From the NCBI RefSeq assembly GCF_021028975.2, contig NC_059430.1, positions 117,428,001-117,492,000 on the forward strand: a stretch of 64,000 bases of DNA, given 5' to 3'. The DNA comes from Sphaerodactylus townsendi. Lineage: Eukaryota. Below the pieces are notes generated by a model, which did no database searches, was not told the DNA's origin, and saw nothing but the letters and a program-made list of their open reading frames with translations. The stretch's first letter is position 1; the number at the start of each line of letters is the position of its first letter. Below, one piece after another: positions 5,124 to 57,322 of this stretch. Made by a program: the position numbers and the translations under genes.

Positions 5124-8100
5124 ATGGGGCGCCATCTCCTCCAAGTCTTGCTTCCTGCAGTCATTTCAGCACTCCTGCTTTGGGAGGGTAAGAAGACTGA
5201 CTTGGGAACTGTAACACTCAGCAACAGAGTCCTCACTAGGAAGCTGTTCTGTCTCTTGTCTTCCAGGACTTGAGCGGAGAATGGTATTTGCCAATTGGGT
5301 GATTGAATTTCTTTGTCTTCTCACTGCAGGAGTCCAGTGCAACAAAAACAGGTACTCTCTGGAAATCACTTCCCCGGTAATTGTGCAAGCGGGTCTCCGC
5401 GTCAACCTCCCGTGCAAGTTCACTTATGACACATCGCGCGACAACCCACGTGCTATATTGTATGGGTATTGGTATGTGGACGACAAGCAAATCCGCAAGC
5501 CACGTTTAGTGGCCACCAGTAATCTGGAGAGAATTAAGGAGATAAGCCCTCATGTTAGAGATCGTTTTGAACTGTCAGAGCGAAAACTGAACCAGGGCGA
5601 CTGCTCCCTCACCATCAGGGATGTCAAAGCAGCCGATGAGGGTATTTACCACTTCAGGATGGAGAAAGGTCGCAAAAGATACAGTTATTCTGCAGCAAAA
5701 GAAAGAGTGTCTGTCATTGTGACAGTTGAGTTCCTGAAAGGTGGGTGCTGCTGACCTCTCAGTCGAAGTGCCCCATCTAATATAATTTCCCCGCTGTTTT
5801 GCGGCTGAATCAGATTTGCTTGTGGAGATTGTCTCTTTCGAGGCAGGGAATTAAGGCAAAGGATAGATCCAATTTTGGACTGTAGGGAAAGGCAAGGCTG
5901 GATCAATTCTACGCCAGAGGTGGGATCCAGCAGGTTCTCACAGGTTCCCGAGAGTAGGTTACTAATTATTTGTGTGTGCCGAGAGGGGGTTACTAATCGG
6001 TGATTTTGCCACGTGATTTTTGCCTTAGTTACGCCCCTCCTCTCAGCAGTAGTGCGCAGAACTTGAAGCAGTCTAGCAGGAGGTGCACTTGCGGCGTATG
6101 GCGCGGGCAGCCTGGCGCCTCGCGGCGTGTATCTCGCTTTCTCTCGGGCCCAAGCGACCGGGCGCAGAGGCCATGCCTCCTGCCACAGCCACGCCCAGGA
6201 ATGCCCTGCCCCTGGAATACCCGGCCACACCCTCATCATGTCCCGCCCATCCCCATTGGCGCTACGCCACAGTTTGAATCCCACCACCATGGGAACCTGT
6301 TACTAAAATTTTTGGATCCCACCACTGATCTACGCTAGCCAGGAGGCACTTATTTAAAAGGGACCTCCTTCTGCAATAGAATCCCATATTCCAGTTTGGT
6401 GGGGAATCTGCCTTGCAGTTCCAGTTTATCCAAGAAGAAGATGGGGAGGAAACACTGGGGTTGGTGTGGTAGTTATACTCTTGACTCCTTTCTTCTCAGA
6501 ACGAAAACCAGATTTAACTGTTCCGGAATTACTGCGGGCAGGACGGGAAGCAAGCGTCACTTGTAGAGCCCCTTGGAGCCCTTCCTCAGGCCAGCCTAAC
6601 ATCACCTGGACAGGCATTTCTGGAGGGGAAAGAAGTCAGCTTGTGACACATGACAGCGTGGCGAGTCACATAGACTTCACCCCTACGGCAGCAGACCATC
6701 TCCAAAATATTACCTGCAAAGCGACCTATTTCAGAGCGCCTAAATATGTGACTACGGAGAGGACAGCCACTCTCAACGTCAACTGTGAGTGGCTGTCCAG
6801 ATCCCAAGATGATTGGGTGTTTATTTATAGCAGGAGTCCTCAACCTTTTTGAACCTTTGGGATTCTGACATAGTAAGGTGGGCGCTGCCACAAAATGGCT
6901 GCCACAGCTTACCTTCAGTCACATAGTGAAGATCTTTGCATTGTGGTGGCAGCTGCTGCCCAAGCCATGTTTTTTTTAATTGCTGATCAAACCTTCAGCA
7001 GCCAATCAGACACCTTGGTGGGCAAAAGTCCCACCCGGCTCTGCCCACTTCCTAAAAACACTTGGTGGGCACCAGAAAAGGTCTCAGTGGGCAGGCACCA
7101 TGTTGGGGGCGCCTCATTTAGATCTTTGCTGATCTAAAGATATGGGTCAGCTGGACCTGGGTAGCATTTGCCAGAAAGGCAGATCAAGTGAATTCTAGCT
7201 AAATTGTGTTTACAAAGGTACCCACCCACAAAAAAACAACAATCACCACCTTTTGATATACTCTGTCTCACAAAAAGATGTTAGTAGGTAGTATTTTTCT
7301 CCGCCACAGAACTCAACATGCTGGACCTTCTTTGTTGTAGTATGCTCCACCTGGGCCCTTGTGCCTACCTAGTCCTGCACCCTCATATCCATTTGAAAGT
7401 TTGGTGAAAGTCATTCAATGAGCTGTCAGTGCTCTTGTATCAAAGTTCAGTAATGCACAAAAGAAAGGTTTTGACAAAGGCAGTGCATAAAAATGAATGA
7501 CAATTCCCATATTCATTCGGTACTATATTCTAATGCGGAAGCACACAATTTTCTCAACCGCTGCACCTCAACTGACCATACTAACATCTTTATCTGAGAC
7601 CGAGTATAGTTGAAACACAGTTTTTCTCCAAATTAAATGGGAGGTATGCATAAGGTGACCAGATGGTCACCTTCAAGAACCAGGACGGGCGGGCGGCCCC
7701 CCGTGCGCGCGCGCACACACACTCGCGCAGCCACACACACTCACACACACACACGGAGCGCACACTCGCACACACAGACGGAGCCACACACACTCATGCA
7801 GCCACACACTCGGGGAAATTGGGGAAAACCCGCGGGATGCGGGACAAGTTCTTTCAAGGCGTGAATGTCCCGCCAAAAGCGGGACGGATGGTCAGCTTAG
7901 GTATGCATTGGTCTTATACTCCAAAATGTTTTCACATTCCTGATGGATGAGAAGAATCCTTAGTTTAGATTCCCTCTTATTCTCTGGTGCTCACTTACCA
8001 GAGGAATCCCTTATCAGCCATGCTTGCCTTTGTGTTACAGATCCACCAAGGAACCTACACTTCAGCGGCCACCTTATACGCCCCAATGGCGGTAAGTTTT

Positions 8101-8845
8101 CAATATGTTTGGGTAGCTATGCATTCACAGTGATAACAGCAATAAATAAATCAACCCGTAACTCGCAAATCACAATAAATATTTAACAAATTCGCCCTCT
8201 GACTTTGCCATGGCTGAATTTTTTTCCCCGGAAAGATAGCGAGAGCCAAAATGTTACGTATTTGAGTAAAAAGAAAACAGCATTCAATTTCTTCCTCTGT
8301 GATTGGCTCTTTCCTCTGCTCTGGTTAAATCGCACCCTCTCATCCCCCACTGCCCATTTGTAAAACATAAGCAACCAATTTCACAGGATTATGCACCCAT
8401 GTAAGGTAGTTCCTCTCCCTTTTCAGCATCAGGTTCCTTAGATAGACAAATTGACTCTTTTGGTGCTGTGCTGAGGAAATTCGCCTGCTCAGTGTTTTTT
8501 GATGGCAAAGGGAAAATAGGTGCGGCTGGTTACCAAAGTTGGAAAACCGTGGTAGGAAATGCCTTGTCCTTTTGGATTCTTGCAGAGGTGCAGTACTTCA
8601 CAAACATCTCCCAGATCGTTCCCCGGGAAGGCCATTCTCTCGTGGTTAGTTGCGAGGCGGACAGCAACCCGCAGAGTTTCGTGAGATGGAAGCTGAAATT
8701 CCCGGGAACTCGCCTCCACATATATAACAATGAACTGAGGCTTTCGAACGTGACTTTGGAGGACGAGAGTAAATACGAGTGCCAGGCCAGCAATGTCGAA
8801 GGTTACGCTGAGAAAGGGGTCTACATCCCCATAAAACATGCGTGA
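5124..8845 (+). CDS. Sialic acid-binding Ig-like lectin (Siglec; CD33/MAG-like), signal peptide + V-set + 2 C2-type Ig domains, ~356 aa, no TM exon found
   Basis: Phase-1 exons: 5124-5187 (signal peptide MGRHLLQVLLPAVISALLLWEG); 5330-5740 (V-set: PCKF, YGYW, GDCSLTI, DEGIYHFRME with the essential Arg); 6500-6784 (C2); 8041-8091 (Siglec linker YPPRNLHFSG); 8586-8845 (Ig: CEADSNP...YECQASN, stop TGA). Probable 5' UTR donor at 4313/4314 and acceptor at 5075/5076. Confidence 0.85.
5915..6327. mobile_element. Non-autonomous hAT element in Siglec intron
   Basis: Same family as 2125-2545; TSD TTCTACGC/ATCTACGC. Confidence 0.85.
7651..7899. mobile_element. Non-autonomous hAT element (Blackjack-like TIR) with internal (CA)n
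   Basis: TIR TAAGGTGACCA/TGGTCAGCTTA; 8-bp TSD GGTATGCA. Confidence 0.75.
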
Positions 8846-13673: not shown

Positions 13674-33297
<19,624 letters not shown>

Positions 33298-40535: not shown

Positions 40536-41791
40536 TAAAGAAAAGGCAGCCCTCAGTGCCAGGCAGGCCCAACCAACTTCATTGCTACTGTCTTTTCTTT
40601 AAATGTTGAGCAGTGAAGAAGCAAATGAGCTGTTGGTATAAAAGCAGCTTTAATTCTGTTGAAACAAAATGCCCAATATGGGCTTTCCCTGTAAGAATGA
40701 CTTGTAAGAGTGCCCTGTGCTAAGAGTGCCCTGTTTAACAACCAGTGCCCTGTCAGGCCTGTGTGCATTTATTGTGAGATACAAGACTATAACCAAACCG
40801 AAACTTTTGAGTGCTACTAGCTTCTACTGTGCATCTCCAGATGTTTTGCATTGGAAACCAAGCACTTCTGTAGCAAAGCTTACAAACACAGAAGCAAACT
40901 GTTAACTGAGTGAATGGATTGCAGCCATGGGTTGTTGAACAATGGAGAACTTTCAGTGGATACAAGAAAATGTTGGGTTGTTTCAAATCCCAGTGCTGCC
41001 ATGAAGCTTTCTGGGTAAGCACAGGCACTTGCTGGCTGGCTGTCTAGTCCTCCTCACAGGGTTGTTGAGAAGATAACATTGAGGAAGTCCCATTCTGACT
41101 GCTTTCAAATCCTTGGAAGAAAAGCCGAAGTATAATAAATACTTTTAACCACTAGTCCTGGGCAGGAATGGCAAATATATGTAACTTCCTCTTATCTCAC
41201 TTTTAGACTACTGGGTGTTTAGGGTTTCTCTAGCAGCTTTATTACAGATATTCATGTCTTTTTGAAATTGAATTTCCCCCCACCTAGTAGCACTTGACTC
41301 AGCAAAGCTTGAAGGTTTCTCCAAGCCTTTTCTGAAAGAGTCACAAGTCAGATAATGGCTCCTTAAGTTGGAGGAAGGCTTCAGACTTTGTTGAGTGGGC
41401 ACTAGGATACATGCCAGTCTGATCAGATGTGACCTTGCTTAGTTGAAACTGAATATAGACACCACACCAAAGACTTTTTGCTTGGAATGTTGGCTTATGT
41501 AAATTAAAGCTACATTTCTACAGGAGCAGCAGTTCTTTGATTGCATTTTCTTATGAATTCTGATCCAGGGTGATTCTTCAGCATTGGTATGAATGGGGAA
41601 ACAAAGCTGTTGTGGCTGCCCTAAGTCCCTTGTTTTAGAAGTTGCACAGTTTGTATAATCTCTGTATGGAGGACACATATCATCTAAGGAGGATCGCCTG
41701 CAAGAAGACTGGGAACCCTGAATTTTTTTGCATTTTCTTTTCTGGCATCTGGGCTTCTGGTGTTTGAACTGTCAAAGGCCTGCCCTCTCGC

Positions 41792-44700
41792 ATGTTCACT
41801 TCCACCAGTGAAACACCTTGGTTTGTCTCAAGAACAATGAGGCGCGACAGACCCCAAGAGCGGGCAGCCAGCTGGCCAGCAGAACACATCAAGGTGCTCC
41901 TTGCCCTCTGGACTGAGGCAGCAGTGACTCACGATCTCAGTTCCCACGGGAGGAATCGTGCTGTGTATGACGGCATTTCCCAGCGCCTTGCCGAAATGGG
42001 CATTTACCGGACTGGGGACCAATGCCGGGAGAAAATGAAAGGTCTAAAAGTCGCCTACCGCAAAGCCAAAGAAAACAATTCAGTGGGGCGGCCCCCTATC
42101 AAGTGTCCATTCTATGATGAGATAGACCAGATAATGACACAGTACATCAACTGCAGGCCAGGCTTTCCCTCAGAAACGGGTGAAGGCTCCAGCACCATCG
42201 TGGACAGGCAAGAAGGACTCCCCATCTCAGAGCCCTGGGGGTCCCAATCTGGTATCTCTGAGCGCTGGGGATCCCAGGCCGCAGCACACTGGTTGTCACA
42301 GACTGCTGCCTCTGAAAGTCAAGGGACTGATGAATTCAGCTATGTCCAGGCCGAGTCCCAAGATGCCTTTGGTGAGATCCAAGTCATCCCAGTTCAAGTG
42401 AAGGAGGAGGAATCGGAAGATGAGATATCACCTGAGCTTGGTAAGCTCTTTTGTCTGTTTTGCCTGAGTTTATGTCAACAGGGCCTTTGCTGCAGGACGT
42501 GTCAGGTCGGGCTGACTCCTTGCTCTGTAGAGTGTAGTGTTGGTTCTGTTATTCTGTCATGTTTATTTCATTTGAGCCATTTCCTAAACCTTTAGTCCCT
42601 AAAGCCTCTGACCCATCCTTCCTTTTTTTCATTGGTACCCATGTACGGTGTATCTCAAGAACTGATTCTTTCCTGTCCTGGGATGTCTCACAAGAACTGC
42701 TGTTATTAAAATTCTGCTGCCATCCAATAATCAAATAAAAATATACCTCAGCCTTGCAGACAAGGTACTTTCCCATAAGGACCGTTATTAATTCAAGGGA
42801 CTTTTATGACACCCATTGTGTACTAGGTAGCTTGCTCACTCATCATATCTTAATGCTGTCGCAATTAACAGTTTGTCCGTTTGGACCGCAGGATCCTCCT
42901 TGTGAAGACAGCATATTTTGTGAGTGTTCCTCAGCTGGAATTTGCTGGTCTTTTTTCTTCAAAGTCTAGATATGCCTAGTACTAGCTCTTTGCCCACTAT
43001 TTCTCTATCTGGAAATTTTAGATGAGAATTCAGCATCCAAGCTGGATTGCTAAACAGATCCTATCCAACAGACAGGCAATTTCATACTAACACTTTTTTG
43101 TGTATTCATGGGATCGCTGCAGATGGGGAAGCTGCAAACGGAGAATGTTCTGTTGCAACCAAATCTAATCAACAGGGTATAATGAAAGTTGATATTCTTG
43201 GACTTTTATATGTTAATTTCTCTATCTGATCATGCAATCAGCTTCCCACAATGCTTCAACTCTCCCTGTCTTTGGCTGCTAAAGCCCATTCAAACATTCA
43301 GAGGGGTGGGAGATTCAAATGGTACTTATGAAGCTGTACCATTTTCAGAGAGTCACACTCTGACCATTTCCTCACCTCCCCCCACCCCCAAAAAAGCCAG
43401 GCTGTCTTCCCATTAAATATTAGCTTTCCAAACACAGTGACTTCTGATGTAGATCAGCGCACTTCCATGCTCCGGCATATACACTGAAGCTATTTCATAA
43501 TGTAAACACTGCGTAATGTATTTTCTCTGAAGTTTTGTTCCACTTTTGATCCTTATTAATTTTCTCACTTACCCACTTAGGTTAGCCCGACTGTTAAAAG
43601 TCTTCAGTATTTGTACATAATTGCATTCCTGTGGATGTTTGTTTATATGTATGTGTCCTCTTCTATAGTGATGGAAACACAACCCATGCCAAGGCATCTC
43701 ATCTCCATGCTTGACCAGCGTCCTCACCTCCGAACCCAGAAGCAAAAGGTTCAGGGGGAGGGACCATCAAGCTATCAAAGGGGCGCTGGCCGGAAGTACA
43801 ACAGTTCCCATCACCTGGAGCTGCAGAGAGTGCAGAGACAGGCGGCCAACCAAGCAGAGGAGAAGCAGAGCTTAGCTGAATTCATTCAGCATGACAGGGA
43901 GATGCGCCGGGAGGACCGGGAATTCCAGGCCCAGCTCTTTGAGAAACTTTTTCAGAAGCAAACGGAGCTTGTTCAAGCACTGTCTCAGAGAGCTCCTGTC
44001 AGCCCTGCCTCCACCACCTGTATCAACACCCTGCAGGCCTTGCTGGTGTCTGCAAAGAATGGAGCAGGAACTGCAGCCCATGGTTCCCAGTTACAGGCTT
44101 TGCTAGAACAGATTGTGCAGGCTGAAGCCTCAGAGAAAGGCCTGCCTAGGCTTCCTGTGAAGGACGCCCTTGGGGGAGCCATGAAGGTGCCTCCTGAGGT
44201 GCAGTACTGGACTGCCGAAGAGATACTGAGGTGGCTGCTGTCTCAGCAATCTCCCAGCGACCAGTGCCCAGAGGCATTAGTGACCCCCAGACCAGGGAGT
44301 GTGGCTGGCAAGGGCCGCAACAAAGTCCAGCAGCTCTGTGCTAAAGAGACAGATGCAGATGTCAATGTCGAAACACAGCGCCAGTGCTTCAGGCAGTTCT
44401 GCTACCAGGATGCCTGTGGGCCCCAAGAGGTTTATAGGTGCCTGTGGGACCTTTCGCATCAGTGGCTGAGGCCAGAGGTCCGCACCAAAGAGCAGATCAT
44501 GGAGTTGTTGGTGGTTGAGCAATTTTTGAGTATCCTGCCTGAAGAAATCCAGACCTTGGTACGTGAGTGCCAGCCAGAAAATGGCAAAGAGGCTGTGGCC
44601 CTGGCAGAGAGGTTCCAGCTTCACTTTGAATCCAAGAGGAAACGGGACCAGGTGAGATCATGTTGAGAACTAGTTATTTCTGATTTGGGGAGATAGGAAA

Positions 44701-47700
44701 AGGGATAGGAGACATCGCATAGATTTCTGCTTGGCCAAGGGGTTCATGATGGAATCACAAGAATCCCATCTCTGTTTTCGGTGACTGATTCTAGCCTGCC
44801 AACTCAAGGAAGGAGAGAACAGAGAGCTGGTGCTTGCAGTTTGACTACTGGAAGCCTTGCCTGTTGGTTCCCTCAGAAATCTCAGACTTTGGCTGACACT
44901 GCACGCACATGTTCAGATTTCTCCTAAATAACTCTAATTGCTAGAAATTTGCTTTAAGAAAAGTTGAAGTTCACATCATTGCAAAGCACAAGACTCAGAA
45001 CTGCACAATATTTTTAGTCCTGTGAAAAGGCCTGGAAGCATATGCAGTAGGCTTTTGTCTTCCAAGGAAACTTAGCGTAAGGTGGTTTTGTTAGCAAGAA
45101 TTTTTTAAAAATTGCTAACAAAAAGCAAATTAGTATTTTCCACCTAAGGCTCACAGGTAAGGGGAACTGCTCCTGTATATCTCTTATAGGGCCTCTTACT
45201 TAAGTGATGACTGCATTAAGTGATTAAGTGATGACTTCTTGTTCCAGACACGAGTCACGTCTGAGGACATGGTTCCAATTTCTTCCCGAGGAAAACTGGA
45301 TGAGAATGAAAGACAAACAGATGTCAAAGATAGTCAGGAGAACCCTGGGAGGACTAGCTTACTGGGTAAGGATTTGCTTATTAAATTGAATATGTATTTT
45401 GCTGTAATCACTTAGCCCTCTGATCTGAACTTCCCAATGATTCATGCAGGTGTAGCAAACCTCAGGATACAGGGATAGGCAAAGTATCCCCAGAATCTTC
45501 ACTAGACAACAGGTAGGGAGTAGATTCTGACTTAAAGGGGAAGCTAGTCACATTTATGACCTAAATACAATCTACCTAACAAGGCATTCAAATAAAAAAT
45601 CTATTCAGATGGATGTTTGATGTTTGGTTCAAGTTACTTGGGTATCGTTGTAATTTGTGACAGCACCAGAAACATGCCACACTTCAAATAACATCAAGTA
45701 CATGCTGATCTGTACATGGGAACTCTATAGGAGACTTCCATATATGAAATGGCTGGATGGCTCTTGAGTGGATCACTGTCAGCCTCCGTCTGTCCTCTGC
45801 ATTATTATTCCAGTAGTACCTGTTGTTATTCTGCTTATGTTATTGTGACCCAAGGCACATTATAAAGGTAAAGGCAGTCCCGTGTGCAAGCCCCAGTCAT
45901 TACTGACCCATGGGGTAGCATCACATCACGACATTTACTAGGCAGACTTTGTTTATGGGGTGGTTTGGTATTACTTTTCCCAGTCATCTACACTTTACCT
46001 CCAGCAAGCAAGTCACATTACAAGTATCATTTTAAAAAAACTTTTCAGGCAATAAGATATGATAACATTTCAATCTAACAGCAAAGTTTGTTAGTAAGCC
46101 CAAAAAAATGCAGTTGGGCTTCAATTATAGAACAGAGTGGAAACCCAAACAATTCATGCAGACATGTCTAAGGTAACAGGACAATCAGTGTAGGAAATAC
46201 TTCATCCTTAATAAAAGCCAGCTCCTGGCCTACAGTGAGATTACCATGAAGGTGAGGGCAGACTGCCAAGCATTTCTGCACAGTTCTGAGTGCAACATTG
46301 TTGATTACTGTGACTGCATCAAAGCTCTTTCTGAGGGTTTGTGCCCTCAAACTCCTGGCTGTAAAGTAAGGAAGCACAACCATCCAGGGAGACTGCATCT
46401 ATGGGCAAGGAGCCCAGGTCTTCTGATTCCCAGCCTAGGGCCTTAACCAAAAGCCCATCTGTTATTTTTTTCTATCTTGGCAGGTCTCTCAAGATAAACT
46501 TATTCTCCATCTTCAGGTACAGAAGCGCACCTTCGTCTGAGGAAGAGACCAAAGATTGCATCCAGGCACAGTGGAGAACATGAAGAGACAACGGCAAAAC
46601 ACAGGAAGCTGGATAATAACCTAGAGGAGCAGGAGGCGACGGAGGCTGCAGAGAGAGTGAACCGCAGGCCGATTCCTGGGTCAGGAAAGCAAGACAGGAA
46701 AGGAAAAGGGCACGAAAGATCTGTTCCAGTTGCTGTGGCTGCGGAGAGTACAGCTGAGGGGCAAGCCAAGGTGGAGGGCAGTGGAAGGGCTTCAAAATCT
46801 CTGAATGGGGCACTTCCTTCTGCCACACTGCGAATGCGGAAGACGCCAGTGAGCCTTGTGCCCTCTCAGCTGGCTTTCGACAAGGATGACATTGTGTCTA
46901 GCCCTTGGCATAGAAATGAAAGCCGCACATCTCCCGAGGCAGATGGACCTTCTCTCAGTGACAGTATTGAGCTGCTGCCGGATTCTCCGTGGAGCGGAAA
47001 CGGCAGCGGTGACACAACCCATGACGGGCCCACTGATTCCAGAGTGGCGCCATCCTGTGCCAACTGCTCTGTCCTGAAGGCTGAGCTGGACACGATCTGT
47101 GAGGAGCTCAGGATAACCCAAGGTAACCACTAGGGGCATGAATGGGAAAGGTGACTTCGCTGGTTCAGGTTGCCAGCCTGTCCTTTACCATGCTGTTGTG
47201 CAAGAAACTGTATTGTGATCACAAGTTCACGTGGCAGGTGATAAGTAAGGGAAAGATAGTCCCCTGTGCAAGCACCAAGTCACTGTGGGGTGGTGTCACA
47301 TCACACCCTTTCCTAGGCAAACTTTGTCTATGCGGTGGTTTGCCATTGCCTTCCCCAGTCCTCTACACTTTAGCCCCAGCAGGCTGGGTACATGTTTTAC
47401 CAACCTCAGAAGGATGAGAGCCAACTCTCTTTTAAATGATTAAGCTGATGTTATGGCTCTTATAACCGTGGTGGCGAACCTGTGGCGCTCCAGGTGTTCA
47501 TGGACTACAATTCCCATCAGCCCCTGCCAGTGTGGCCAATTGACCATGTAGACCGTGAACATCTGGATAAACAATTGGCCATCTGGATCACTGTAGTCCA
47601 TGAACATCTGGATAAACAAGTGGCCATCTGGATCACCGCATAAACAATTGGTCATGCTGGCAGGGGCTGATGGGAATTGTAGTCCATGAACATCCGGAGT

Positions 47701-48642
47701 GCCATAGGTTCGCCACCACTGCTCTATAACAATGGTTTAGCATGGACTGGCCACAGTACAGTGCTAGTGTCAGCACTCCTCGGGAATGTCACCAAGATCA
47801 ACTTCCCATGGGCAAGTCATGTCCCTTTCCACAACTTTGCACACAACCCGGCAGCTTTACACCGGTAACAAGATGCCTGCAAGCAGCAGCCACCAAATTG
47901 AGTAAGGCTGATGTAATAGCGATTGCTTGATGTGGCAAATGTGCCTCCATGTGTTGGCATGGGGAACGAGGAGCACCATGGCAGTACAATGCATAACTAA
48001 ACCCAGAGTTCAAATGCTGTGCATACTTGTGATATTGGTGAGGAAAATCCAGAATTATTCTCTGGTGTCACCAGTGGTGGTTTATGAAATGCTTTGCAGA
48101 AGAAGTGGGTTTTAATGAAGGATCTGAAGGGGAGAAGCCTTCTGGGTAGACAGGGAGAGGCCGTGCCAGGGGTATAGAACTGCATGTAGGAGGCACGCGG
48201 AGAGACTTGAACAATAGCAGATGGTTCTGCAGAACCCAGCCGGGGAGGGGGGAGGTGATCGGAGATATATAGTTGAAGTTAGGAGCCTTAATTCTGAAGA
48301 CAAAGATTTGAAAAGTCAATCTAGTACAGAAACGTGTTGTAAATCGTAGGCTCAAAGATCAATTATTGATAAAAGAAAGATGGCACTAGTGAAGGTCTGA
48401 ACAAAAACTGTCAGCATCTCTTCTATTATCAATCATTCTGTGTACGGACAGTGTTGCAGGTCAGTTTCATGTTTGTTGTTGGTCCAGCTTCCACACTGTA
48501 TGGACTCAGCGGAACCTCCCTGCAAGACTTAACAGAAGCTCTTGGCACCATTGCGCACATCCTCAACAACAGGAAGTCTTCATCAGCCGCAAACGCACCC
48601 CAGAAAGTTGCTGAAATACCCACGAGGCCAGTATGGCAATAG
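41792..48642 (+). CDS. Myb/SANT-like DNA-binding + coiled-coil + SCAN + degenerate KRAB-A protein, ~836 aa (ZSCAN/MSANTD-like, no C2H2 fingers)
   Basis: Exons 41792-42440 (W...E..LLALW...[36 protein letters not shown], Myb/SANT-like); 43669-44651 (coiled coil, then SCAN: [13 protein letters not shown]...[26 protein letters not shown]); 45248-45365 (KRAB-A relic); 46517-47122; 48488-48642 (TAG). All GT-AG and phase-compatible, 2511 nt. Confidence 0.8.
47466..47721. mobile_element. ACTACAATTCCC-family hAT MITE with internal tandem expansion
   Basis: Same arms as 14303; loop contains repeated AACATCTGGATAAACAA..GGCCATCTGGATCAC; TSD CTCT(T)ATAA. Confidence 0.75.
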
Positions 48643-50068
48643 AAAAATGTAAGTCTTTCCCTGCCTCCTATCCTGTGTTTTTTTCCCAAAAAATGATTGG
48701 TTCTTCTCATATCATCTGCTTCTCACTCTTTGTTCCCCAGAAACAGTATTTTCAACACTTTGTCTTTTTCCATAGTGAAAGCAGGCAAAAAAGAAGAGGG
48801 TGCAAAAATGCAGTTTAGTGGGAATTGTATTCCCTAAAGATTTAGCTTTGTTACTTATTTTGTAAGATGGAGTCTGTAGCTTTCCCCTGGCTCCAGAGCA
48901 GATGGCTGCAGCAAGAACTGAAATAGTTCTTTTAAAAAGCAGGCAGCCTGACTTGAGGAGGGTACAAGGACACCCTTTGCTCTTGGATTAAACCTATTAT
49001 CCATCACCATCAGAGGTTCCTGGCTTCAGAAGTGAGTGGGGATGAGGATGGCTCCTGATCTGGGAACAGATTGGGACAAAGTCCCACTCCTGAAAGAATT
49101 CTCCAGGTCCCAGATGGGGGAGAGACAGGGGTAAGGACTCTAATACTGAAAACACAAGCAGACAGTGAGGACAAGGAGCTCTGGTCTAGATCGTGTTGAA
49201 TAGCCCCTCTTTGAAAGAAGAACAAGGGAAATACTAGTACAATTACCGTCCTCTTTTTTCTCTCTGCGTTGGCAGAGTACTGTCCTATCACTTGGATAGG
49301 ATAACTCCGGGTTAGGAAATACCTGGAGATTTTGGGGGTGGAGCCTGAGGAGGGTGGGGTTTGGAGCACAGAGGGGCTTCAATGGGGTATAATGCCATAG
49401 AGTCCCTCCTTCCAAAGCAGCCACTTTCTCCAGGTCAACTGATCTCTGTCCTCCGGAAGTCAGTTGTAATAATGGGAGATCTTGTAGCTACCACTTTGAA
49501 GCTGGCAAGCCTACCTGTCACTCTTGAGGAGCATAATGTATCCAGGTGTGTGCCTTTTACCTCTGTTGCACAACAACTGGTGGGGCAAGCCCTGAGAGTT
49601 TCCCCTTCCTCCATAGTCTTTTGTTTTCAGCTTTGTACAAGACTAAGTGATTTAGTTCTCTGCTCATATAACACACTGCCAGATATCTGCACCATCAGTT
49701 TACCTGGCCTTCATCATAAATTGTAGTGACACGTTGGAGAGGTTCTAACAGTCACCATACGCACGCAGAGTATAATTAATGTTGTTAAAGCAAAGTTTCC
49801 AAATGTTTTGGTTACTGGGGGAATGTAGAAATTGTTGTACCTGAGAATTGTGAAAGGAACAAGCTTTTGAAAAAGCTTCAACCATTTTTAGTATGCTTAG
49901 TTTACACTTCTTAAAGAAAATCTAAGTGGAACTTCTGCTTGTTTAACTAACAGTTTTTAAAAAATTTTACATTCTTAGAATTTCTGAACCACCGAATGAT
50001 CTGAACGTACTCCAGCATGAAGGCAACCAAGAAATTCAACAGCAATAGCGACAGCATTAGGATGAAGG

Positions 50069-56479: not shown

Positions 56480-57322
56480 ATGAGCACAAAGAACCAAGAG
56501 CCAAGCCTGGATCCGTCCCATGCCGACCCAAGGGAGGAGAGGGATCCACCCAGCAGAGCCGAGCATCAAAGTTTGGACAGAGATGAGCCCGAGGCAGCCG
56601 GCGATGATGCAGAAGGAGGAGGAGCCAAGCTTTCAGAGATGTCTCAGCAATCTGCCAATCAGTGTCCAACCAGAATGAGCTTGCCAGTAAAATGTGAAGA
56701 AGAGCCAAAGACTGAGGCAGGCGTGGCATCCTGTTCCTCAAAGGTGGCCGCGCCATCTCCTATGCCTTCCTTAGGAGAAGGGAAGGGGTCAAAGAGGATG
56801 ATGGAGGACGATGCCGAAGCCTTTAAAGAAATGCCAGATGTCTGCCAAGATGCTCGGGGGCCAGGGAGGGCAATGCTATTGCCTGACCTCTTTGGAGACG
56901 CCCAGCAAGCTCACAGCAGCCTGGAGGCTGGCAGGGCCGGGGGCTGCGGCAAAGTGGAGCAAGCCGTCCCGTGCCTTTCCAACATGGGCTCGGAGAACCA
57001 GCGGAAACGGTTCCGGGGCTTCGCGTACAAAGAGACTGAAGGCCCTCAGGTGGCTTACGAGCGGCTGCAGGATCTCTTGTTCCAGTGGCTGCAACCGGAG
57101 GCCCGGAGCAAGGAGGAGATTGTGGAGCAGCTGGTTCTCGAACAGTTCCTGAACCTCCTCCCGGAGGACGTTCAGCGCTGGGTTCGGGAGCGCCACCCCG
57201 AAAATGGAGACGAGGCTGTGGCTCTGGCGGAAGACTACCAGTTTCTGCACCCGGAGCCTGGGAGGCGGCCGTACCCGGAAAGGGCAAGGCAGAGAGCTTC
57301 GGCGAGAAGTTGGCTTCGCTGA
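56480..57322 (+). CDS. SCAN-domain protein, 280 aa, with Gag capsid-like pre-SCAN segment and no zinc fingers
   Basis: Acceptor TCTCCCCCAG at 56380; [17 protein letters not shown]...[51 protein letters not shown]; stop TGA 33 nt upstream of donor CG/GTAAGT (57355). Confidence 0.75.

What the first reader, a model, noticed from the sequence alone, without database searches (positions are those of the whole stretch)
41792..48642. Zinc-finger-less gene built from transposon-derived modules: Myb/SANT-like domain placed N-terminal to SCAN, plus a KRAB relic
Seen: five phase-compatible exons encode Myb/SANT-like DBD, an acidic SUMO-type motif (VKEEESEDE), a charged coiled coil ([24 protein letters not shown]), SCAN, a KRAB-A relic, basic NLS-like motifs (KRKR, LRKRPK) and a CANC + coiled-coil tail. 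There is no C2H2 finger. Known: Myb/SANT + coiled coil is the layout of PIF/Harbinger DNA-binding proteins and their domesticated derivatives (MSANTD family), SCAN derives from Gypsy/Gmr1 Gag, and in ZSCAN20/ZSCAN29/ZKSCAN2 the order is SCAN-(KRAB)-Myb/SANT-ZF. Inference: a lineage-specific fusion in which a Harbinger-type DBD replaced the zinc-finger array, giving a possibly uncharacterised transcription-factor type.
Basis: partly seen in the sequence, partly recalled or inferred. Interest (0 to 1): 0.8.

Follow-up and report, generated by a model that had tools for sequence, protein, structure and literature searches.

The report
Finger-less Myb–SCAN gene of reptiles
This is a real, conserved gecko gene whose protein starts with a transposon-derived Myb/SANT DNA-binding domain, continues into a SCAN dimerisation domain and a decayed KRAB box, and has no zinc fingers. 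The same gene is present but unnamed and unstudied in lizards, snakes, tuatara, turtles and alligators, and no bird or mammal copy was found.

Summary
Five + strand exons with canonical AG/GT sites give one open frame. Pfam finds Myb_DNA-bind_4 in exon 1 and SCAN in exon 2. No C2H2 motif occurs in any frame of the 64-kb window.

Three corrections to the model:
- Orthologues start at ATG 41837, giving 821 aa rather than 836.
- The ancestral exon-2 acceptor at 43651 has lost its AG, so this genome must use 43669, removing six residues.
- The stop lies five codons earlier than in relatives.

The gene is not a narrow lineage-specific fusion. Co-linear proteins of about 820–910 aa, labelled "uncharacterized protein LOC…", exist in squamates, tuatara, turtles (two tandem copies) and alligator. 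An exhaustive profile search found no bird or mammal copy.

dN/dS against Gekko japonicus is 0.03 for the Myb exon, 0.05 for SCAN and 0.19 overall. An intron-less contig from another squamate joins all exons. RNA reads of a sister species cover exons but not introns.

The tuatara counterpart of exon 3 is a significant Pfam KRAB, so the "KRAB relic" is real.

The nearest Myb relatives are turtle Myb–coiled-coil–KRAB genes, not ZSCAN20/29. A Myb–coil head was probably fused onto a SCAN–KRAB scaffold. No paper describing the family was found.

The parts
41837..42440 (+). Encodes the Myb/SANT-like domain and an acidic linker. Ends in phase 1 at a GTAAG donor.
   Evidence: It is 91-98% identical in protein to squamate orthologues. 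dN/dS is 0.033 against Gekko.
41870..42133 (+). Myb_DNA-bind_4 (trihelix-type Myb/SANT-like) domain, residues 12-99.
   Evidence: Pfam 4e-19, 69 bits against a cut-off of 27. The domain is nearly invariant from gecko to alligator. Three to four helices are predicted.
42398..42409 (+). V-K-E-E followed by an acidic run; this fits the SUMO-consensus pattern (inference).
   Evidence: V188, K189, E190 and E191 are invariant in 32 orthologues. SUMOylation itself was not tested.
43669..44651 (+). Coding exon 2: long helix, conserved [12 protein letters not shown] motif and SCAN, all in one exon. The acceptor used here lies 18 nt downstream of the orthologous one (43651), whose AG is GT in this genome.
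43809..43985 (+). Long charged helix, probably a coiled coil, containing [31 protein letters not shown].
   Evidence: A single helix (residues 250-313) is predicted in the Gekko orthologue, with pLDDT up to 95. Many invariant residues. Weak but co-linear similarity to the coil of SCAN-less Myb proteins P0150, P0122 and P0165.
44199..44240 (+). Conserved short helix [14 protein letters not shown], function unknown.
   Evidence: Q387, Y388, W389, T390, A391, E393, I394, L395, W397 and L398 are invariant in 32 orthologues. Predicted helix 391-400.
44370..44630 (+). SCAN domain.
   Evidence: Pfam 9e-36. pLDDT about 90. dN/dS 0.05. The homodimer model scored 0.84 against a best control of 0.05.
45248..45365 (+). 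Coding exon 3: degenerate KRAB-A exon, 118 nt here. Squamate copies are three residues shorter than the turtle, alligator and tuatara copies in the alignment.
   Evidence: No Pfam hit in the window. The tuatara orthologue has Pfam KRAB at 1e-8 in the same position, and the positional alignment is. dN/dS 0.37. Predicted disordered in Gekko.
46517..47122 (+). Coding exon 4: basic LRLRKRPK stretch (46531-46554), a long disordered region, the conserved [11 protein letters not shown] motif, a CxxC pair (47056-47067) and the start of the C-terminal helix.
   Evidence: (C764 and C767 invariant). No Pfam family. dN/dS 0.28.
48488..48642 (+). Coding exon 5: second C-terminal helix ([20 protein letters not shown]) and stop TAG at 48640-48642. 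The stop is 5 codons earlier than in orthologues.
   Evidence: dN/dS 0.23.

Best explanation
This is an intact, expressed, single-locus host gene. It is the gecko orthologue of Gekko japonicus LOC107119872 and of unnamed genes in other squamates, tuatara, turtles and alligator. It most likely encodes a nuclear DNA-binding regulator.

Proposed working:
- The N-terminal Myb/SANT-like (trihelix-type, Harbinger-related) domain reads DNA in place of a zinc-finger array.
- The long helix after it and the SCAN domain make the protein a homo-oligomer. They probably also let it pair with the many SCAN-zinc-finger proteins of reptiles.
- The exon after SCAN is a KRAB-A box. It is still recognisable in tuatara but has decayed in squamates, so TRIM28-type recruitment is probably lost here.
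- A conserved CxxC plus helix-turn-helix tail adds a further interaction surface of unknown partner.

What is shown: the gene structure, the domains, conservation, purifying selection, transcription in relatives, and a predicted SCAN dimer. What is inferred: DNA binding, nuclear localisation, SUMOylation, partner choice and regulatory output.
For: - Canonical splice sites and an open frame.
- Pfam Myb_DNA-bind_4 and SCAN.
- Fifteen orthologues map exon by exon onto the window.
- About 40 proteins with both domains occur across squamates, turtles and alligator, plus tuatara.
- Synteny with Gekko, including the downstream SCAN-only gene.
- dN/dS is 0.03 (Myb), 0.05 (SCAN) and 0.19 overall, at dS 0.35.
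- The intron-less contig L002 from SRR12656984 joins exon 1 to exon 2 at the same donor and continues through exons 3-5.
- RNA reads of a related species cover the exon bins, while intron bins are near zero.
- The predicted structure has ordered Myb, long helix, SCAN and C-terminal hairpin.
- The SCAN homodimer scored 0.84 against a best control of 0.05. That mark was reached by 21 of 30 solved homodimers and 0 of 23 monomers. Run agreement was 100% and partner pLDDT at least 88. The pass may come from memory of solved SCAN dimers.
- A Pfam KRAB stands at the exon-3 position in tuatara.
Against: - There are no splice-junction reads from this species. The single read-laying run listed only repeat-induced joints.
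- L002 could in principle be a processed retrocopy rather than mRNA.
- L002 carries 28 extra nt before exon 3 that shift the frame, giving a 587-aa product.
- DNA binding by this Myb domain is untested. SANT-like domains can bind proteins or histones instead.
- Exons 3-5 match no known family.
- This genome differs from relatives at the exon-2 acceptor and at the stop codon. I read both as tolerated changes, but they could be assembly errors.
Confidence: 0.68

Rival explanations
1. The protein is not itself a DNA reader. It acts as an adaptor or decoy: it pairs with SCAN-zinc-finger proteins through SCAN, as SCAN-only proteins do, and uses the Myb/SANT-like fold for protein or histone contacts.
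For: SCAN is intact and predicted to dimerise. A SCAN-only gene lies next door. It follows from established knowledge that SANT-type folds often bind histone tails rather than DNA. Most of the protein is predicted disordered, as in scaffolds.
Against: The highest constraint in the gene (dN/dS 0.03) falls on the Myb domain, including its basic third helix [19 protein letters not shown], which is invariant from gecko to alligator. Myb_DNA-bind_4 is the DNA-binding domain family of trihelix and Harbinger Myb-like proteins.
Confidence: 0.2
2. The five exons do not form one functional gene in this genome. Either two genes (a Myb gene and a SCAN gene) are mis-joined, or this copy is becoming a pseudogene, given the lost exon-2 acceptor and the early stop.
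For: The ancestral acceptor AG is GT here, and a TAG replaces GAG near the end. No junction reads from this species are available. Several non-RefSeq gene models in other squamates skip the SCAN part.
Against: A strong in-frame acceptor lies 18 nt downstream, and only 5 terminal residues are lost. There are no other stops or frameshifts in 821 codons, although neutral divergence from Gekko is about 25-30% in introns. dN/dS is 0.19. The contig L002 and some 40 annotated proteins join Myb and SCAN.
Confidence: 0.05
3. It is a transposon-encoded protein (the Myb-like gene of an active Harbinger element that captured SCAN), not a host gene.
For: Myb plus coiled coil is the layout of Harbinger Myb-like proteins. 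Other SCAN-less Myb+coil proteins occur in reptile genomes.
Against: It sits at one syntenic locus with conserved introns and neighbours in two gecko genomes. Orthology across reptile orders follows species relationships. Purifying selection is strong. No transposase ORF or terminal repeats were seen around it.
Confidence: 0.02

Closest known systems
ZSCAN20 / ZSCAN29 / ZKSCAN2 (SCAN, with or without KRAB, then Myb/SANT-like, then C2H2)
   Same: They combine the same two Pfam families (SCAN, Myb_DNA-bind_4). Some reptile members also lack detectable fingers, for example the Hemicordylus ZKSCAN2-like protein P0098.
   Different: Domain order is reversed: SCAN comes first in all 14 such proteins recovered. 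Their Myb domains do not group with this family's Myb domain. SCAN of mammalian ZSCAN20 falls outside the sauropsid SCAN clade that holds this family. There is no C2H2 array here.
Turtle Myb-coiled-coil-KRAB(-ZF) genes (P0122 cluster, some labelled 'zinc finger protein 333-like'), with Chrysemys LOC122173973 and a kiwi 252-aa Myb-coil protein
   Same: They are the closest Myb domains (local support 97 in the tree). They are co-linear over Myb, linker and coil (P0122 against Gekko residues 8-354, E 2e-30). They carry the same N-terminal Myb-coil head on a KRAB-type body.
   Different: They have no SCAN. Their KRAB is canonical (Pfam 1e-24 to 1e-26). They lack the conserved Cxx[10 protein letters not shown] tail. 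Identity in the Myb domain is only about 40-46%.
MSANTD family, NAIF1 and other domesticated Harbinger Myb-like genes (PMC9392472)
   Same: An N-terminal Myb/SANT-like domain followed by a helical region. That paper lists ZSCAN20 among candidate Harbinger-derived genes.
   Different: None of those genes carries SCAN or KRAB. Reptile Myb-SCAN genes are not mentioned in that paper. Direct phylogenetic nesting of this Myb domain among Harbinger Myb-like proteins was not tested here.
SCAN-only proteins (SCAND1 type) and the neighbouring SCAN-only gene at 56480-57322
   Same: SCAN without fingers. The presumed action is through SCAN dimerisation.
   Different: This protein also has a strongly constrained Myb domain, a coiled coil and a conserved tail.

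Membership tests
SCAN-domain family | SCAN (Pfam PF02023) domain above the gathering score | tested here: met
   122 bits against a cut-off of 27, E 9e-36. Also met in the orthologues.
SCAN-domain family | SCAN mediates dimerisation | tested here: inconclusive
   The homodimer model scored 0.84 against a best control of 0.05. This is a prediction only and may reflect memory of solved SCAN dimers.
SCAN zinc-finger proteins (SZFP) | C-terminal tandem C2H2 zinc-finger array | tested here: not met
   No C2H2 motif in six frames of the 64-kb window. No zf-C2H2 Pfam family in any orthologue. The transcript-like contig L002 ends without fingers.
KRAB-containing proteins | KRAB-A box recognised by Pfam PF01352 | tested here: not met
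   No hit for window exon 3 at E<=10, nor for nine full-length squamate, turtle and alligator orthologues at E<=1. The feature is met only in the tuatara orthologue (35 bits, 1e-8), so the window exon is a relic by positional homology.
ZSCAN20/ZSCAN29/ZKSCAN2 type | Order SCAN, then (KRAB), then Myb/SANT, then zinc fingers | tested here: not met
   Myb is at residues 12-99 and SCAN at about 440-530. All 14 canonical members recovered have SCAN first.
Myb/SANT-like (Myb_DNA-bind_4, trihelix/Harbinger type) DNA-binding proteins | Myb_DNA-bind_4 domain above the gathering score | tested here: met
   69 bits against a cut-off of 27.
Myb/SANT-like (Myb_DNA-bind_4, trihelix/Harbinger type) DNA-binding proteins | Sequence-specific DNA binding | not testable with these tools
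   Needs SELEX, PBM, DAP-seq or ChIP.
Domesticated Harbinger Myb-like genes (MSANTD type) | Myb domain nests among Myb-like proteins of Harbinger/PIF transposons | not tested
   No transposon consensus library was available. The tree held only database proteins.
Domesticated Harbinger Myb-like genes (MSANTD type) | Single-copy, syntenic, under purifying selection | tested here: met
   Synteny with Gekko. dN/dS 0.19. Orthologues across four reptile orders. Copy number in this genome outside the window was not checked.

The most novel reading that the evidence does not exclude
Reptiles keep an old, undescribed class of regulators in which a Harbinger-derived Myb-coiled-coil head, instead of a zinc-finger array, serves as the DNA-reading part of SCAN and/or KRAB scaffolds. 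This gene is the Myb-SCAN-KRAB form and the turtle genes are the Myb-KRAB form. The class arose before lepidosaurs, turtles and archosaurs split, and was lost in birds. It is not seen in mammals. It may target Harbinger/PIF-type repeats or a fixed set of host genes through SCAN-mediated pairing with SCAN-zinc-finger proteins.
Probability: 0.25. Interest if true: 0.7.

Novelty: new variant of a known kind. Interest (0 to 1): 0.55.

Why it matters
SCAN and KRAB are normally thought of as accessories of zinc-finger arrays. Here the same scaffold is driven by a different, transposon-derived DNA-binding head. The arrangement has been kept under strong purifying selection across squamates, tuatara, turtles and crocodilians, by established divergence dates roughly 250-280 million years, yet it has no name and no study.

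It offers a natural test of two questions. Is SCAN/KRAB function separable from zinc fingers? How does a KRAB box decay once another module takes over (recognisable in tuatara, gone in squamates)? It is also a clean case of two or three domesticated mobile-element modules combined in one host gene.

It is not a new principle. All the parts are known, and the gene models already sit in public databases.

Tried and rejected
- **Splice junctions from reads.** No splice joint was listed. No RNA run of the window's own species was on offer.
- **Pfam on exons 3, 4 and 5 and the pre-SCAN part of exon 2, at E<=10.** Nothing relevant.
- **ESM Atlas look-up of the C-terminal module (tuatara fragment P0105).** Best scores were 0.83-0.84, below the level that means anything.
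- **Fold search.** Not run, because the full-length model has mean pLDDT 48 and only known modules are confident.
- **Emerson and Thomas 2011 (PMC3209298).** Not held. Other papers do not mention this architecture.
- **Searches with the joined spliced protein.** The joined CDS was translated only inside a script, to check frame. Searches used single exons by reference, or full-length database orthologues.
- **The orthologues' last tiny coding exon.** The Gekko locus has a run of N there. I left it alone and did not locate that exon in the window.
- **'SCAN-less ancestral MSANTD-type gene in turtle' (P0007).** Rejected. It is a mis-predicted model of the same family, and proper turtle models have SCAN.
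- **Earlier findings of the scan.** These concerned the Siglec exons only, and a word search returned nothing.
Full report
**1. What is in the sequence**

Each is bounded by AG and GT. Together they form an open frame of 836 codons.

- Pfam places Myb_DNA-bind_4 in exon 1 (E 8e-19) and SCAN in exon 2 (E 9e-36).
- Exons 3-5 and the first 241 residues of exon 2 match no Pfam family, even at E<=10.
- A regular-expression scan of all six frames of the 64-kb window finds no C2H2 finger. The only pattern match is one spurious hit in a low-complexity run at 14.8 kb.
- The next gene downstream starts with its own SCAN exon at 56480-57322. A finger exon spliced onto this gene would therefore have to lie beyond another gene.

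I translated the joined CDS only inside a script, to check the frame. Searches used single exons by reference, or full-length database relatives.

**2. Corrections to the model**

tblastn of 15 full-length relatives hits exactly these five exons in order. Three details change.

- All relatives start at MRRDRPQ, which is ATG 41837. The product is therefore about 821 aa.
- In Gekko japonicus (L001) and in a transcript-like contig (L002), exon 2 starts 18 nt further upstream, at the equivalent of 43651. The window has GT where they have AG. The strong acceptor at 43669, which stays in frame, must serve here, at the cost of six residues.
- The window has TAG at 48640 where Gekko has GAG. Five terminal residues are lost.

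In Gekko the annotated CDS runs on to a further small exon inside a run of N. I left that alone.

**3. It is one gene, it is old, and it is constrained**

*Distribution.*
- A word search with exon 2 found a Naja naja model that joins the Myb exon to exon 2.
- A search with that model returned about 40 proteins of 760-910 aa carrying both PF13837 and PF02023. Nearly all are named "uncharacterized protein LOC..." or "SCAN box domain-containing protein".
- They come from snakes, lizards, geckos, an amphisbaenian, many turtles (often two tandem genes) and Alligator sinensis.
- Tuatara has the gene too (P0223).
- The window is closest to Gekko japonicus LOC107119872, with exon identities of 68-98%.

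*Synteny and selection.*
- The two gecko loci are co-linear through introns and flanks at 70-82% nucleotide identity, including the downstream SCAN-only gene.
- Exon-wise dN/dS against Gekko is 0.033 (Myb exon), 0.23 (pre-SCAN part of exon 2), 0.050 (SCAN), 0.37 (exon 3), 0.28 (exon 4) and 0.23 (exon 5). Over 816 codons it is 0.19 at dS 0.35.
- The first 100 residues are almost invariant from gecko to alligator.

**4. Transcript evidence**

- The window's own species has only DNA-like runs. RNA runs exist for a relative that holds 48% of the sampled 31-mers, which I estimate as about 2% divergence.
- Laid on 41500-47499, those reads cover the exon bins at depths of about 1-14. The intron bins are near zero, apart from two repeats and some reads of one run in intron 1.
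- The joint table was swamped by repeat joints, so no splice joint was listed.
- Independent support comes from L002, a 3072-nt Logan contig of SRR12656984 from another squamate. It contains exons 1-5 without introns, and exon 1 is joined to exon 2 at the same donor.
- Two caveats apply to L002. A processed retrocopy cannot be excluded. The contig also keeps 28 nt ahead of exon 3, which shifts the frame and would give a 587-aa Myb-coil-SCAN product.

**5. The modules**

The AlphaFold model of the Gekko orthologue (32-sequence alignment, mean pLDDT 48) is confident only in five places:

| Module | Residues | pLDDT |
|---|---|---|
| Myb helices | 15-105 | 55-74 |
| One long helix | 250-313 | up to 95 |
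| Short helix over the invariant [12 protein letters not shown] motif | 391-400 | 73 |
| SCAN | 443-546 | about 90 |
| C-terminal helix-turn-helix, starting at the invariant CxxC | 765-813 | 59-75 |

Everything else, including exon 3, is predicted disordered.

A SCAN homodimer model scored 0.84 against a best control of 0.05. That mark was reached by 21 of 30 solved homodimers and by 0 of 23 monomers. The runs agreed in 100% of contacts and the partner pLDDT was at least 88. Because SCAN dimers have been solved, the pass may be from memory.

**6. The KRAB relic**

- The window's exon 3 has no Pfam hit, and neither have the squamate, turtle or alligator orthologues.
- The tuatara orthologue has a significant KRAB box (35 bits, 1e-8) at residues 518-556, directly after SCAN.
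- In the family alignment that box sits exactly on the exon-3 column block. The squamate copies are three residues shorter there than the turtle, alligator and tuatara copies.
- The relic reading therefore holds by positional homology. Key KRAB-A residues are gone in squamates. That fits the weakest constraint in the gene (dN/dS 0.37) and the predicted disorder.

**7. Where the pieces came from**

*The profile search.* I ran an exhaustive HMMER search of 1.84 billion representatives with a SCAN-less model of the family (Phrynosoma P0047). It gave 1270 hits at E<=0.001. Of these, only the best 150 were listed and examined.
- Among those 150, only family members and unlabelled fragments match beyond the Myb domain.
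- No bird, mammal, amphibian or fish protein among them carries the coil plus tail.

*Domain order.* Among the recovered proteins that have both Myb and SCAN, all 14 outside the family have SCAN first and one to four Myb domains after it.

*The Myb tree.* This tree has 264 rows and few columns, was built with FastTree, and is only a guide. It puts the family's Myb domain (local support 97) with five SCAN-less sauropsid proteins:
- A turtle cluster with Myb, coil and a canonical KRAB, sometimes with a finger remnant. Some members are labelled ZNF333-like.
- Chrysemys LOC122173973.
- Two short turtle proteins.
- A 252-aa kiwi protein.

The turtle Myb-coil-KRAB protein aligns co-linearly with Gekko residues 8-354 (E 2e-30).

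*The SCAN tree.* It places the family inside a sauropsid SCAN clade (support 98), apart from mammalian ZSCAN20. The neighbouring SCAN-only gene lies weakly beside the turtle and crocodilian family members.

*My reading (inference).* A Harbinger-type Myb-coil module became the 5' part of SCAN-KRAB and KRAB genes in an early sauropsid. Whether this gene ever had fingers is unknown. "Replaced the zinc-finger array" is therefore not shown.

**8. How it probably works**

The strongest constraint lies on the Myb domain, including its basic third helix, and on SCAN. The most economical model is a nuclear regulator with these features:
- It reads DNA through the Myb domain.
- It oligomerises through the long helix and SCAN.
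- It can pair with the expanded reptile SCAN-zinc-finger proteins. That expansion is described in bioRxiv 10.1101/2025.03.03.638093.
- In squamates it no longer uses its KRAB box.

The invariant VKEE-acidic motif fits the SUMO consensus, and LRLRKRPK fits a nuclear localisation signal. Both readings are inference. The main rival is an adaptor or decoy that does not bind DNA itself. The pseudogene, mis-join and transposon-gene readings are poorly supported.

**9. Known or new**

The gene models are public but carry only automatic names.
- Full-text searches for SCAN with Myb/SANT, Harbinger, MSANTD, ZSCAN20/29, Gmr1 or Anolis found no description of a Myb-first SCAN gene.
- The MSANTD/Harbinger paper (PMC9392472) lists ZSCAN20 only as a candidate and does not mention reptiles.
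- The key older SCAN paper was not available.

I class the gene as a new variant of a known kind: known modules in an undescribed, old and strongly constrained arrangement.

**10. Verdict**

- Interest is moderate (0.55).

Noticed in passing
window 43649-43668: The exon-2 acceptor used in Gekko and in contig L002 (AG just before ATGTGG...) is GT in this genome. The next AG, 18 nt downstream, keeps the frame and removes six residues (DVASPI in relatives).
   Followed up: partly
window 48640-48651: The TAG stop stands where Gekko has GAG, so the last five residues (ERNGF in Gekko) are missing. A GT donor follows 8 nt later, as in Gekko, so the old last exon would now be 3' UTR. That exon was not located, because the Gekko locus has an N run there.
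   Followed up: partly
window 56480-57322 (+): A separate SCAN-only first exon (Pfam SCAN 1e-34) with no Myb and no fingers within the window. It is syntenic with a 282-aa SCAN-only gene in Gekko. In the SCAN tree it sits weakly beside the turtle and alligator members of the family, so it may be an old tandem derivative.
   Followed up: partly
L002:1750-1777 (Logan contig of SRR12656984): The transcript-like contig keeps 28 nt ending in the exon-3 acceptor. This shifts the frame and ends the protein after SCAN (587 aa). Separately, non-RefSeq models in Naja, Crotalus, Phrynosoma and Lerista splice out the SCAN part of exon 2. Either could reflect alternative isoforms or prediction artefacts.
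   Followed up: no
window 45896-46010 and 47275-47499: Two very high-copy interspersed repeats lie in introns 3 and 4. Contig depth reaches the tens of thousands to 100,000+, and many RNA reads land there. They flooded the joint and loose-end tables of read laying.
   Followed up: no
window 43100-43499: One RNA run of the related species (X6) has reads at depth 2-3 inside intron 1, with fixed differences at 43227 and 43253. This could be an unannotated exon, a retained intron or a repeat.
   Followed up: no
window 21562-21966 and 25323-25880 (-): Exons of a proteasomal AAA-ATPase (Walker A GPPGCGKT and the OB C-terminal domain), probably PSMC4-like.
   Followed up: no
window 5281-8845 (+): Siglec/CD22-like immunoglobulin exons (V-set, then C2/I-set). 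Earlier notes of this scan already cover them.
   Followed up: no
proteins P0122, P0251, P0258 (sea turtles): A turtle gene cluster encodes Myb_DNA-bind_4, a coiled coil and a canonical KRAB, in one case with a finger remnant. It is the closest relative of the Myb-coil head and is itself unstudied.
   Followed up: partly
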